Below are positions 37,789 to 40,700 of a stretch of 64,000 bases of DNA, piece after piece. Under the pieces are notes generated by a model. The model searched no databases and was not told the origin of the DNA. It was given only the letters and a program-made list of their open reading frames with translations. Numbering within the stretch: the first letter of the stretch is position 1; each line of letters starts with the position of its first letter. This DNA comes from Macrostomum lignano (Eukaryota), in assembly GCA_002269645.1 (NCBI GenBank), contig NIVC01001446.1:224579-288578 (forward strand), given 5' to 3'. The translations under genes were made by a program, and so were the position numbers.

Positions 37789-40700
37789 ATGTTCAGTTGC
37801 GTGCGTCACGCTTCAAATGAATCCCGAACTAGTGCTAAGCGCCAGCAGTATAAATGTGACGTCGAGCTAACTCTAAATGGCATGGAAGGTGTCACCCTTA
37901 GCAATGGAGTACTGTTTGCAAAGGTTCGCCTACTGAGCGGTGGCCAGTTCTGCCGGTACTCAAGCCGGCGCGAGATTCGCGACAATCGGGTCACGTGGTC
38001 CGGCACCGATTGCAGCGCAGTAACCAATGGCAACGGTGACTCCGGCGAGCCCTACGAGCCGCCGTTGCAGTTCAGCTGCCGCCTACCAGCCGGAACAATT
38101 CGCGTCTCAGTTAGAAAGGAAGAGAAAGGCGGCCGATCATTCTCTAAGCTCGGCTTTGTGAACATTCATCTCGCAGGGATCGGTTGCCTCAACCAGCCCG
38201 AGCAGCGAGCCTTCATTCTCACGCCCTACAGCCCCAACCAGCGGCTGGACAATTCAACTTTAAGACTGAGTCTCTGCCTGAAATGCGACGCCTTGGACTG
38301 GGAGTCGGTCGCTGAGGATCGGCTGTTCATGGAGCGCGGATCGTCTCCGGAGACGCCGCCACCGCCGCCACCGCAGCAGCTGCAGCCTGCAGCGTATCAT
38401 CATCAAAGCTCGCAGCCATCTCAGCAGGCGTCGCCCCTGTCGCTACCGGCGCCTCTACTCGTCTCCAACTGGCGCCGACAATCCGACTGCTCGAGCGTGC
38501 TGTCCGGTGCCTGTCCAGGGTTCGATAGTCGTGCCGGGAGCTTGGGTAGAGGAGACTCTGCTGCACTCATCGGGTGAGTATTTGCTTCAAGCTAAAACAA
38601 CAGAACCAATGCTAAAACCCGAGGACGAACGAGTCATGAAATACCGATTTTTCCTATTTATCCATTCGTGAGATCTAGTGACATCCACCTGTTCTATCTG
38701 AGGGTCTTAAGTCGATCAACACGAAATCGAGGAAGGATGCTCAATATAATATCTTCTTATCTTCTATCGTCACAGCGTCACAGCAATGCATGAAAGGGGT
38801 TCATTTTAATTCTAATTTCATTTTAAAAAAGAAAATAAAGTATAGGAGAAGATTGATGCAAGAGCCGGGAAGAGAGCTAGGCGCATCAGCTCATGGCTAA
38901 TCCAGCAGCGCCCATGCCGATCGGCCGGTCTGCCGGGAGCCGCTAAGATGGATCGGGAATGCCGGCTTAAACCGAGAGGCGCTGCCCAATGCGCCTCTGG
39001 CTGCTGGCTGAGTCGAATTGGACTCTGCGAGTGGAGCCTTAAGTTGAAAGCTGTTCAAGCAAGTGATGCAATTATAGGGGAGATGGAAATGGGAGTCAGC
39101 GTCTGCAGCGGAAGGCGAGTGAAGGAGGCCATTCGAGCTTGAGCATATGTTGTATCCCCCTTCCTCGCTGGCACGGCCGGGTTGGGCGACGGGTAGCGGT
39201 GTCGGGGTTCGGGTACTAGACTGCCCAGGGCTTACGAGCTCGATCGGCGACCCGAGGCGTACGGACACTTCGGGGGGAGGTCAAGGTTGAGAAGTCGAGA
39301 GAGAGGGGAGGGGCGGCTGTGGGCAGGCGGCCACTCGACAGCCTGGTGAGTCAAGGAAGAGAGAGAGGGCTGCGGGCGGTCGGCCACTCGACAGCCTGGT
39401 GAATCAAGGAAGAGAGAGAGGGCTGCGGGCGGTCGGCCACTCGACAGCCTGGTGAGTCAGACTGAGGAGAGAGTGAGAGAGAGAGAGATCAGGAGAGCGA
39501 CCCGAGGAACACAGGCAATTGTCTCGACAGCTTACCGGGCCGGGTCGATTATAGCACTCATACACGGGAAGGCCGATCGATTGCAATAAATTGAGTCTTC
39601 GCAGTAAGAGACCGTCTTTACGGCTGATCGCTGGTCACGTTCGTTTATTTATCGCGGTGGGCGCAAATGGGGCGCAGGCACGGTGAGAAAAGGGGCGGGG
39701 TCTGAGCGTCGCCTTAAATAACGAGTAAAAAGGGGCAGGGGCGCAAACAAGGGGGGGGGAGAAAGGGCTTAAACAATGGAGCTGATTGACAGCTGATTGG
39801 CTGCGGCGAGGGGAGGGTGGAAGCGCGCACGGCCAGGGAGAGGGAGAGAGAGCAGAGGCCCAGCCAATCAGCACGGCTAGCCAAAGGGCTAAACAGCCAA
39901 GGCGAGAGAGAGAGAGAAAGAGAGCAGAGGCTCAGCCAAAGGGCTCATAGCTCCAGACTGGCTTGAGCCGGGGGGGGGTAACAATAATCAACTACCAAAG
40001 TCAACAACTATCAAAGTGCACTTGCACCAGGGGAGCACTGTGACACAGGTCACAACACCCTCCCCCCTAAAAAAAGAAAACGACGCGCTTTGACTGAATG
40101 AAAATGAAAAAAAATGTAATGAAATGAAACTGAATGAAAGAGACCAAGAGTGTCAGGCAGCGGCCGAGAGCGCAGGACAGGGGCCGAGGATGTCGGACAG
40201 GCCGAGAACACCGGGCACGGCCGAGAATGCCGGACTGTGGCCGAAAACGCCGGGCATGGCCGAGAATGCCGGACAGCGACCGAGAATGCCGGGCAGCGGC
40301 CGAGAACGCCTGGCATGGCCGAGAATGCCGGACAGCGGCCGAGAATGCCGGGCAGCGACCGAGAACGCCGGGCATGGCCGAGAACGCCGGGCATGGCCGA
40401 GAGTGCCGGACAGCGGCCGAGAATGCCGGGCAGCGGCCGAGAATGCCGGGCAGCGACCGAGAACGCCGGGCATGGCCGAGAGTGCCGGACAGCGGCCGAG
40501 AATGCCGGGCAGCGGCCGAGAATGCCGGGCAGCGGCCGAGAATGCCGGGCTGTGGCCGAAAACGCCGGGCATGGCCGAGAATGCCGGACAGCGACCGAGA
40601 ATGCCGGGCAGCGGCCGAGAATGCCGGGCAGCGGCCGAGAACGACTGGCAGCGGCCGAAAACACCGGGCAGCGACCGAGAACGCCGGGCATGGCCGAGAG

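What the first reader, a model, noticed from the sequence alone, without database searches (positions are those of the whole stretch)
39582..39652. Gypsy LTR carries the host spliced-leader exon at its predicted transcription start (SL mimicry)
Seen: within the 910-bp LTR, on the element's sense strand, lies CCGTAAAGACGGTCTCTTACTGCGAAGACTCAATTTATTGCA (39623-39582), and ATAAATAAA begins 29 nt upstream (39652). Known (from memory): this is the Macrostomum SL exon minus its terminal TG, and flatworm SLs end in AUG. Inference: ATAAATAAA doubles as TATA and U3-located poly(A) signal (as in ASLV-type short-R LTRs), so genomic RNA would begin with an SL copy and resemble a trans-spliced host mRNA for translation, export or escape from silencing. 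Loss of only the terminal AUG avoids an upstream ORF and hints at selection. I know of retroelements that insert into SL genes (NeSL, CRE/SLACS) but not of an SL built into an LTR.
Basis: partly seen in the sequence, partly recalled or inferred. Interest (0 to 1): 0.95.

Follow-up and report, generated by a model that had tools for sequence, protein, structure and literature searches.

The report
Host spliced-leader copy inside a retrotransposon LTR
A flatworm (Macrostomum lignano) retrotransposon remnant carries, inside its terminal repeat, a perfect DNA copy of the first 42 of 44 bases of the host's spliced-leader RNA, most likely picked up by reverse transcription; there is no evidence yet that it sits at the transcript start or does anything.

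Summary
Window 39623-39582 (- strand) equals bases 1-42 of the published 44-nt M. lignano spliced leader (SL). It lies at nt 435-476 of a 910-nt LTR (40057-39148). That LTR has TGTTGT...ACAACA ends and a polypurine tract directly upstream. It sits downstream of a Ty3/Gypsy integrase remnant.

Only this one LTR is in the window. The element is 5'-truncated, and I could not retrieve any other copy of the family. The key test, whether the SL is family-wide or private to this copy, therefore stays open.

A genuine SL RNA gene fetched from a metagenome shares only exon bases 1-42 (plus one G upstream) with the LTR. Promoter flank, splice donor and Sm site are not shared. The copy is therefore RNA-derived and is not a gene fragment.

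The start-site claim is not supported. The LTR's only AATAAA lies 21-26 nt upstream of the SL, so cleavage is predicted at or near the SL start. A TATTTAA/CCAAT arrangement about 65 nt further upstream fits a conventional R. An AUG with a 9-codon upstream ORF follows the SL copy.

A 2025 paper already reports partial SLs in flatworm LTR and LINE elements. I rate this a new member of a known kind, of moderate interest.

The parts
39582..39623 (-). DNA-encoded copy of host spliced-leader exon nt 1-42 (LTR nt 435-476). The G at 39624 also matches the base before the SL in a genuine SL RNA gene.
   Evidence: Exact match to the published SL. Alignment with SL RNA gene L004 and two SL-bearing transcripts shows identity ending at SL position 42.
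39148..40057 (-). 910-nt 3' LTR with ends TGTTGT...ACAACA.
   Evidence: Termini and length. No second copy in the window.
40058..40068 (-). Polypurine tract AGGGGGGAGGG abutting the LTR 5' end, preceded by a T-rich run.
   Evidence: Read directly from the sequence.
39644..39652 (-). ATAAATAAA. It contains the only AATAAA of the LTR (39649-39644).
   Evidence: Motif scan. No AATAAA or ATTAAA lies between the integrase stop and the LTR.
39714..39720 (-). TATTTAA, an alternative TATA box. It predicts a start near 39690 and an R of about 65 nt ending at the SL start.
   Evidence: Motif scan. The start position is inference.
39796..39800 (-). CCAAT box. A second one, inverted (ATTGG), lies at 39868-39864. 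A GC box CCCCGCCCC lies at 39700-39692.
   Evidence: Motif scan and annotated LTR print-out.
39532..39561 (-). Only ATG downstream of the SL in the LTR. It opens a 9-codon upstream ORF (MSAIIDPAR) that overlaps a TATAAT motif at 39553-39548.
39531..39535 (-). GTAAG, a splice-donor-like site 46 nt after the SL copy. About 1.8 such sites are expected by chance in 910 nt.
   Evidence: M. lignano donor motif GT[G/A]AG from PMC8629364.
39315..39459 (-). 2.7 tandem copies of a 53-nt unit inside the presumed U5.
   Evidence: Tandem Repeats Finder and BLAST.
40156..40818 (-). Tandem array with a 20-nt period (also reported at periods 59, 79 and 119) between the J-domain ORF and the polypurine tract.
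40952..41833 (-). 293-aa ORF with an N-terminal J domain (HPD motif) between the integrase and the LTR. A TTGCAG trans-splice-acceptor consensus lies at 41855-41850, 16 nt before its ATG.
   Evidence: Pfam DnaJ, E=1.3e-12. PDB J-domain matches to residues 1-70 only. Sequence. Acceptor motif [T/C]TNCAG from PMC8629364.
42431..43561 (-). Open 376-codon remnant of a Ty3/Gypsy integrase: the C-terminal part of the rve core plus Integrase_p58_C. Homology starts at about 43462. No RT, RNase H, protease or gag is found anywhere in the window.
   Evidence: Pfam, homologues, tblastn with related Pol proteins.

Best explanation
WHAT IT IS. The 42-nt segment is an RNA-derived copy of the host spliced leader. 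It became built into the LTR of a Ty3/Gypsy retrotransposon by reverse transcription.

HOW IT GOT THERE (inferred). The element's reverse transcriptase copied an SL-bearing RNA up to its capped 5' end and then resumed on element RNA. That RNA could be the SL RNA itself, an SL-trans-spliced host mRNA, or an SL-trans-spliced transcript of the element. The leader was thereby fixed in the sense orientation in the LTR.

WHERE IT SITS (inferred). In the copy seen here, the 3' LTR of a 5'-truncated element, the SL lies immediately after the LTR's only AATAAA. This is at the predicted R/U5 border. In a complete element it would be part of the 5' leader of the genomic RNA. It would most likely lie about 65 nt inside the transcript, not at the cap.

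FUNCTION. It is most likely a by-product of the interplay between trans-splicing and retrotransposition. No function is shown.

SHOWN VERSUS INFERRED. Shown: identity with the SL, the limits of the homology, the LTR context, and the motif positions. Inferred: the capture mechanism, the timing (before integration), and the U3/R/U5 borders.
For: 1. Exact 42/42 identity to the published SL; no chance matches in 100 shuffles.
2. A genuine SL RNA gene (L004: SL, then GTAAG donor, then an Sm-like AGTATTTTTAG) shares only exon nt 1-42 plus the preceding G with the LTR. Upstream flank and intron are unrelated. Rfam finds no RNA gene in the region. The source was therefore an RNA copied to its 5' end, not genomic DNA of the SL gene.
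3. The copy ends 2 nt before the splice junction. This fits an arbitrary template-switch point and does not fit a canonical trans-spliced junction. Transcripts L002 and L003 show the normal ...GCATG+exon junction.
4. The orientation is sense and the location is inside a reverse-transcribed unit. That unit has a polypurine tract, TG...CA ends and an integrase upstream.
5. The LTR has a single AATAAA 21-26 nt upstream of the SL, with CA dinucleotides at 39634/33 and 39626/25. No other poly(A) signal lies between the ORFs and the LTR. TATTTAA and CCAAT boxes lie further upstream.
6. Literature. In 24 parasitic flatworm genomes, 597 loci with partial SLs were associated with LTR and LINE elements. 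The authors attributed them to integration of trans-spliced retrotransposon transcripts (PMC12582326). The Gypsy element Cer1 of C. elegans produces an SL1-trans-spliced mRNA (PMC3315495).
Against: - Only one LTR copy is available, so capture before integration (family-level) cannot be separated from a later private insertion.
- The absence of the last two SL bases is not explained by simple trans-splicing of the element RNA.
- A cDNA ending in SL sequence lacks R homology for the first strand transfer, so an aberrant transfer must be assumed.
- The short repeat CGATC on both sides of the SL is not significant (P about 0.13).
- TSS and poly(A) positions are motif predictions only. The ATAAATAAA at -29 and a GC box at about -75 are also compatible with a start at the SL.
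Confidence: 0.55

Rival explanations
1. The SL copy starts R. ATAAATAAA acts as both TATA box and U3-located poly(A) signal. Genomic RNA begins with an SL look-alike that helps translation, export or escape from silencing. The terminal AUG was lost by selection.
For: ATAAATAAA begins 29 nt upstream of the SL start, which is a proper TATA distance. A GC box lies at about -75. The SL copy is perfect over 42 nt and in the sense orientation. An ASLV-type layout with AATAAA in U3 exists in retroviruses (my own knowledge).
Against: With AATAAA ending at 39644, cleavage 10-30 nt downstream leaves R at about 10 nt or less, which is very short for strand transfer. The TATTTAA (39720) and CCAAT (39800) spacing fits a start near 39690. 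A uATG with a 9-codon ORF follows 20 nt after the SL, and there is no significant ATG depletion. A DNA-encoded SL would carry an m7G cap, not the trimethylguanosine cap that marks real trans-spliced mRNAs (general knowledge). There is no family-level or expression evidence.
Confidence: 0.12
2. A private, post-integration insertion. A short cDNA of the SL RNA 5' part was captured in this particular genomic LTR copy, for example during double-strand-break repair or by a stray reverse transcriptase. It has nothing to do with the family's biology.
For: The homology limits are RNA-type. Only one copy is seen. CGATC occurs on both sides of the insert, a possible 5-bp duplication. 42/42 identity suggests a young event.
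Against: The flanking repeat is not significant (P about 0.13). The reported association of partial SLs with LTR and LINE elements in flatworms points to capture during retroelement replication. The sense orientation fits capture by the element's own RT (weak evidence, a factor of two).
Confidence: 0.15
3. A processed retrocopy of an SL-trans-spliced host mRNA, like the relict SLs of dinoflagellate retrogenes, that happened to land in an LTR.
For: Retrocopies carrying SLs are known (cited in PMC12582326).
Against: The SL lacks its last 2 nt, whereas real trans-spliced RNAs keep ...GCATG. There is no A-run of 7 or more within 3.5 kb downstream. Pfam finds no domain in the 123-aa ORF that follows (38897-39268, -). 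The downstream sequence runs on to a proper ACAACA LTR end.
Confidence: 0.04
4. An assembly artefact. Mlig_3_7 was polished with Pilon using RNA-seq reads as well as genomic reads. SL-bearing reads clipped at a trans-splice acceptor could have been written into the consensus. The SL is directly preceded by CAG.
For: The methods of PMC5730564 state that Pilon polishing used STAR-mapped RNA-seq. The base pair before the SL is AG.
Against: An artefact should carry the full ...GCATG junction. No RNA read links the upstream genomic flank to the SL, so local reassembly could not close. No other SL copy exists in this 64-kb window, whereas 38.8% of M. lignano genes are trans-spliced.
Confidence: 0.04
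5. A fragment or pseudogene of the SL RNA gene, copied at the DNA level.
For: It shares the leader sequence.
Against: No shared promoter flank, no GT donor after the leader, no Sm site, and no Rfam hit.
Confidence: 0.01

Closest known systems
Partial spliced-leader sequences associated with LTR and LINE elements in parasitic flatworm genomes (Mol Biol Evol 2025, PMC12582326)
   Same: A leader-only piece of the SL, with no donor or Sm site, lying within a retroelement. The proposed origin is by reverse transcription of SL-bearing retroelement RNA.
   Different: That report covers trematodes and cestodes and treats such loci as filter discards, without anatomy. Here the host is the free-living M. 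lignano. The copy is nearly complete (42 of 44 nt), perfect, and placed at the predicted R/U5 border of a defined LTR.
Relict SLs at the 5' ends of retroposed genes (dinoflagellates, Slamovits and Keeling 2008; nematodes, Barnes et al. 2019; both cited in PMC12582326)
   Same: A DNA-encoded SL that betrays passage through an RNA intermediate.
   Different: Those are processed copies of host mRNAs with the complete SL-exon junction. Here the SL stops 2 nt short and sits inside a retrotransposon LTR, and there is no poly(A) tail.
SL-gene-specific non-LTR retrotransposons (NeSL-1 in nematodes; SLACS, CZAR and CRE in trypanosomatids)
   Same: A physical association of a retroelement with SL sequence.
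   Different: In those cases the element inserts into SL RNA genes. Here a piece of SL is inside the element, the element is LTR-type, and no SL gene is nearby (Rfam negative).
SL1 trans-splicing of the Gypsy/Ty3 element Cer1 in C. elegans (PMC3315495)
   Same: It shows that LTR-retrotransposon transcripts can receive the host SL.
   Different: In Cer1 the SL is added post-transcriptionally to a subgenomic mRNA and is not encoded in the LTR.
Retroviral capture of host RNA fragments by template switching; short-R LTRs of the ASLV type
   Same: Copy-choice by RT explains a host RNA piece copied to its 5' end. AATAAA upstream of R is a known layout.
   Different: These resemblances come from my own knowledge and were not tested here.

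Membership tests
Ty3/Gypsy (Metaviridae) LTR retrotransposon | Two long terminal direct repeats flanking the element | tested here: not met
   Only one copy of the 910-nt sequence is in the window. The element is 5'-truncated and the contig ends at window position 64000.
Ty3/Gypsy (Metaviridae) LTR retrotransposon | LTR with TG...CA inverted termini, and a polypurine tract abutting the 3' LTR | tested here: met
   TGTTGT...ACAACA ends, with AGGGGGGAGGG at 40068-40058.
Ty3/Gypsy (Metaviridae) LTR retrotransposon | Pol with the order PR-RT-RNaseH-IN; integrase core plus C-terminal module | tested here: inconclusive
   Only the C-terminal two-thirds of the integrase is present (rve E=7e-7, below the Pfam cut-off; Integrase_p58_C E=7e-8). 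The best relatives are Gypsy-type integrases at 39-48% identity. RT, RNase H and PR are absent.
Ty3/Gypsy (Metaviridae) LTR retrotransposon | Primer-binding site and target-site duplication | not testable with these tools
   The 5' end of the element is missing.
SL RNA gene | Complete leader ending in AUG, followed by a GT splice donor | tested here: not met
   The LTR has ...TTGCA|ATCGAT. The genuine gene L004 has ...TTGCATG|GTAAG.
SL RNA gene | Sm-binding site and hairpins in the intron part | tested here: not met
   There is no similarity to the L004 intron and no Rfam family match.
SL-bearing processed retrocopy of a host mRNA | Full SL-exon junction, poly(A) tail, coding body | tested here: not met
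   The SL is 2 nt short. There is no A-run within 3.5 kb. Pfam finds no domain in the downstream 123-aa ORF.
Partial SL embedded in a flatworm retroelement (PMC12582326) | Leader-only SL match within or at most 500 bp from an LTR or LINE element, lacking the other SL RNA features | tested here: met
   No other copy was retrievable: protein-word search, representative search, viral-contig scans, and a metagenome scan that returned only one SL gene and two mRNAs.
   There are only motif predictions, and they are ambiguous. No 5'-end data are on hand.

The most novel reading that the evidence does not exclude
The SL is a family-wide, conserved part of this LTR. It forms the extreme 5' end (a short R) of the genomic and subgenomic RNAs. 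The element's transcripts then imitate host trans-spliced mRNAs without being trans-spliced. A donor-like site 46 nt further on (GTAAG at 39535) may splice to the TTGCAG acceptor in front of the J-domain ORF.
Probability: 0.08. Interest if true: 0.85.

Novelty: new member of a known kind. Interest (0 to 1): 0.45.

Why it matters
If it is only a fossil, it is a clean, datable footprint. It would show that retrotransposon replication in a trans-splicing animal samples SL-bearing RNA. It also warns annotators that SL BLAST hits and SL-read trimming can mislead inside LTRs.

If the SL proves family-wide and lies at or near the RNA 5' end, it would be a new way for a retroelement to dress its RNA as host mRNA. 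That would make questions about SL function in translation and silencing testable in M. lignano, where LTR reporter transgenesis already works (PMC12801592).

Tried and rejected
SEARCHES FOR OTHER COPIES (ALL NEGATIVE)
- Self-comparison of the window for a second LTR found none. Only tandem arrays appear.
- tblastn with related Pol proteins found no RT, RNase H or PR in 64 kb.
- The protein search with the integrase gave the window's own protein as a singleton cluster. The nearest relative is at 39-48% identity in an unrelated metagenome eukaryote. Hits P0005 and P0012 come from other genome assemblies, not Mlig_3_7.
I treat this as inconclusive.
- Exons of the neighbouring carrier gene, used to look for a duplicated locus, found nothing, not even the window's own gene.
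- A full HMMER scan of 1.84 billion representatives with the LTR frame crossing the SL junction returned only repeat artefacts.
- Exact look-ups of the J-domain ORF and the NT-C2 ORF are not on record.
- Viral-contig scans with the SL and two LTR 20-mers gave zero hits.

OTHER CHECKS
- Rfam gave no match.
- A flanking direct repeat and flank duplication around the SL are not significant.
- ATG depletion in the presumed leader is not significant.
- The bacterial-type promoter and terminator scan is irrelevant for a eukaryote.
- The supplement of the 2025 M. lignano LTR paper, with family consensus sequences, is not held.
- The Wasik et al. 2015 paper is not held.
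Full report
WHAT IS THERE

The - strand of window 39623-39582 reads CCGTAAAGACGGTCTCTTACTGCGAAGACTCAATTTATTGCA. The published M. lignano spliced leader is CCGTAAAGACGGTCTCTTACTGCGAAGACTCAATTTATTGCATG (PMC5173321). The window therefore carries SL bases 1-42 without a mismatch, followed by AT instead of TG. 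A search for the 44-mer with up to three mismatches finds this one site and nothing in 100 shuffles. The window is the last 64 kb of contig NIVC01001446.1 of the M. lignano assembly Mlig_3_7. The leader is thus the host's own.

CONTEXT

The segment lies in a 910-nt unit, 40057-39148 on the - strand. The unit has perfect 6-nt inverted ends TGTTGT...ACAACA. It is directly preceded by a polypurine tract (AGGGGGGAGGG, 40068-40058) and a T-rich run. Going upstream on the same strand, the following features appear:
- a tandem array with a 20-nt period (40156-40818);
- a 293-aa ORF with an N-terminal J domain (40952-41833);
- a 44-nt tandem array (42035-42403);
- an open 376-codon remnant of a Ty3/Gypsy integrase (42431-43561).

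tblastn with related Pol proteins finds only this integrase part. There is no RT, RNase H, protease or gag anywhere in the window. Self-comparison finds no second copy of the 910-nt unit. This is therefore the 3' LTR of a 5'-truncated element. The LTR call rests on the termini, the polypurine tract and the position, not on an LTR pair.

ORIGIN OF THE SL PIECE

A scan of metagenome contigs with a 32-nt SL core returned three loci.
- Two (L002, L003) are transcripts that begin inside the SL and show the normal junction ...TTGCATG+exon.
- The third (L004) holds a genuine SL RNA gene...ACTCTTTG|SL(44 nt)|GTAAGACACCGG...AGTATTTTTAG... It has the donor and the Sm-like site described for M. lignano (PMC8629364).

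Aligned with the LTR, identity covers exactly SL positions 1-42 plus the single G before position 1. The promoter flank and the intron are unrelated. Rfam finds no RNA gene in the region. The copy was therefore made from an RNA and reached that RNA's 5' end. It is not a DNA fragment of the SL gene.

It is also not a canonical trans-spliced junction, because it stops two bases short. It is not a processed host mRNA either. No A-run follows within 3.5 kb, and the sequence runs on into a normal LTR end.

The simplest reading is copy-choice by the element's reverse transcriptase onto an SL-bearing RNA. That RNA could be the SL RNA, an SL-mRNA, or a trans-spliced element transcript. This fits the arbitrary 3' limit, the exact 5' limit and the sense orientation. 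The mechanism is inference.

A 5-nt repeat CGATC on both sides of the insert is not significant (P about 0.13). The wider flanks show no duplication.

IS THE SL AT THE TRANSCRIPTION START?

The LTR contains three TATA-like motifs:
- TATTTAA at 39720;
- ATAAATAAA at 39652;
- TATAAT at 39553.

It also contains two CCAAT boxes (39800, 39868) and a GC box (39700-39692). It has exactly one AATAAA (39649-39644). No AATAAA or ATTAAA lies between the integrase stop and the LTR. This hexamer is therefore the likely poly(A) signal of the element.

Cleavage 10-30 nt downstream falls at 39634-39614, with CA dinucleotides at 39634/33 and 39626/25. That is at or just before the first SL base.

If transcription started at the SL (39623), R would be about 10 nt or less. 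If it starts about 30 nt after TATTTAA (near 39690), R is about 65 nt, AATAAA lies about 20 nt before its end, and CCAAT sits at about -110. That is a conventional layout, with the SL at the R/U5 border.

Both readings put the SL in the 5' leader of a complete element. I estimate about 0.2 for a start within a few bases of the SL. No 5'-end or 3'-end data can be reached with the tools.

THE 'AUG LOSS BY SELECTION' ARGUMENT

An ATG at 39561, 20 nt after the SL copy, opens a 9-codon upstream ORF. The presumed leader has 1 ATG against 2.3 expected (P=0.27). This gives no sign of selection against upstream AUGs. A template switch at position 42 explains the missing TG without selection. A later 2-nt loss remains possible.

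ARTEFACT CHECK

Mlig_3_7 was polished with Pilon using RNA-seq reads as well as genomic reads (PMC5730564), and the SL is preceded by AG. I therefore considered that SL-bearing reads were written into the consensus. Three points argue against it:
- the missing TG;
- the lack of any read type linking the upstream flank to the SL;
- the absence of other SL copies in this 64-kb window, although 38.8% of M. lignano genes are trans-spliced.

Only raw genomic reads can exclude it. I give it about 0.04.

FAMILY-LEVEL TEST

This is the decisive test, and I could not run it.
- The integrase is a singleton in the protein collection. Its nearest relatives (39-48% identity) belong to other organisms.
- Searches with LTR reading frames found nothing usable.
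- Exact look-ups of neighbouring ORFs failed.
- A search meant to find a duplicated locus through the neighbouring carrier gene returned nothing.
- Viral-contig scans were empty.

No M. lignano genome can be searched at the DNA level with these tools.

WHAT IS KNOWN

A 2025 survey of 24 parasitic flatworm genomes discarded 597 candidate SL loci because they lay in or next to LTR and LINE elements and carried only partial leaders. [quoted passage not shown] In C. elegans the Gypsy element Cer1 makes an SL1-trans-spliced subgenomic mRNA (PMC3315495). Relict SLs in retrogenes are classic in dinoflagellates.

The general phenomenon is therefore on record. What is new here is a well-resolved example in a free-living model flatworm. 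It has a near-complete, perfect leader and defined homology limits, and it sits next to the LTR's poly(A) signal. The 2025 study of M. lignano LTR families does not mention it in the sections I read (PMC12801592).

VERDICT

The identity and the LTR context hold. The start site, the function and the selection argument do not.
- The best explanation is an RT-mediated capture of the host SL fixed in the LTR (confidence 0.55).
- Novelty: a new member of a known kind.
- Interest: 0.45. It would rise sharply if the SL proves family-wide and cap-proximal.

Noticed in passing
window 40952-41855 (-): An intact 293-aa ORF with an N-terminal J domain (HPD motif present) and an otherwise unmatched C-terminal part lies between the integrase remnant and the 3' LTR. 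It is preceded by an exact M. lignano trans-splice acceptor consensus (TTGCAG, 41855-41850) 16 nt before its ATG. It could be an accessory gene of the element or a captured or host gene. No close homologue was found.
   Followed up: partly
L004 617-725 (metagenome contig Ga0302322_100095745); L002 and L003 (Ga0316592): A complete Macrostomum-type SL RNA gene (SL, GTAAG donor, Sm-like site) and two SL-capped mRNAs sit in JGI metagenome or metatranscriptome contigs. Macrostomum nucleic acid is therefore present in those samples. L004 also has a partial upstream repeat of the SL start (GCCGTAAAC).
   Followed up: partly
window 42431-43561 (-): The integrase remnant keeps an open frame of 376 codons although the element has lost everything upstream. 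Homology begins abruptly at about 43462, next to a (GACA)n-type array (43575-43845).
   Followed up: partly
window 50560-53414, 44079-45885, 29050-32100, 49055-50087 and many others: The window is packed with long tandem arrays (periods of 4-59 nt). One is a 2.85-kb array of a 12-nt unit. These arrays swamp ordinary repeat finders and create long spurious ORFs.
   Followed up: no
window 37789-38577 (+) and 37170 downward (-): Just downstream of the LTR lie a 262-aa ORF with an NT-C2 domain on the opposite strand and the first exon of an EF-hand/mitochondrial-carrier gene on the same strand. That gene starts at 37170, about 2 kb from the LTR end. LTR read-through into the host gene is conceivable.
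   Followed up: no
window 39315-39459 (-): Inside the presumed U5 there are 2.7 tandem copies of a 53-nt unit (91-94% identity). The presumed U5 is unusually long, about 476 nt.
   Followed up: no
assembly-wide (methods of PMC5730564): Mlig_3_7 was polished with Pilon using RNA-seq reads. In a trans-splicing organism this is a possible source of transcript-derived bases in the genome consensus. It should be kept in mind for any SL-in-genome finding.
   Followed up: partly
literature (PMC8629364): The sequence first published as the M. lignano 'SL RNA' is reported to map to the 5' end of a protein-coding gene (Mlig013257.g1, scaf577). This could be a second genomic locus with a DNA-encoded SL and is worth comparing with this LTR.
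   Followed up: no
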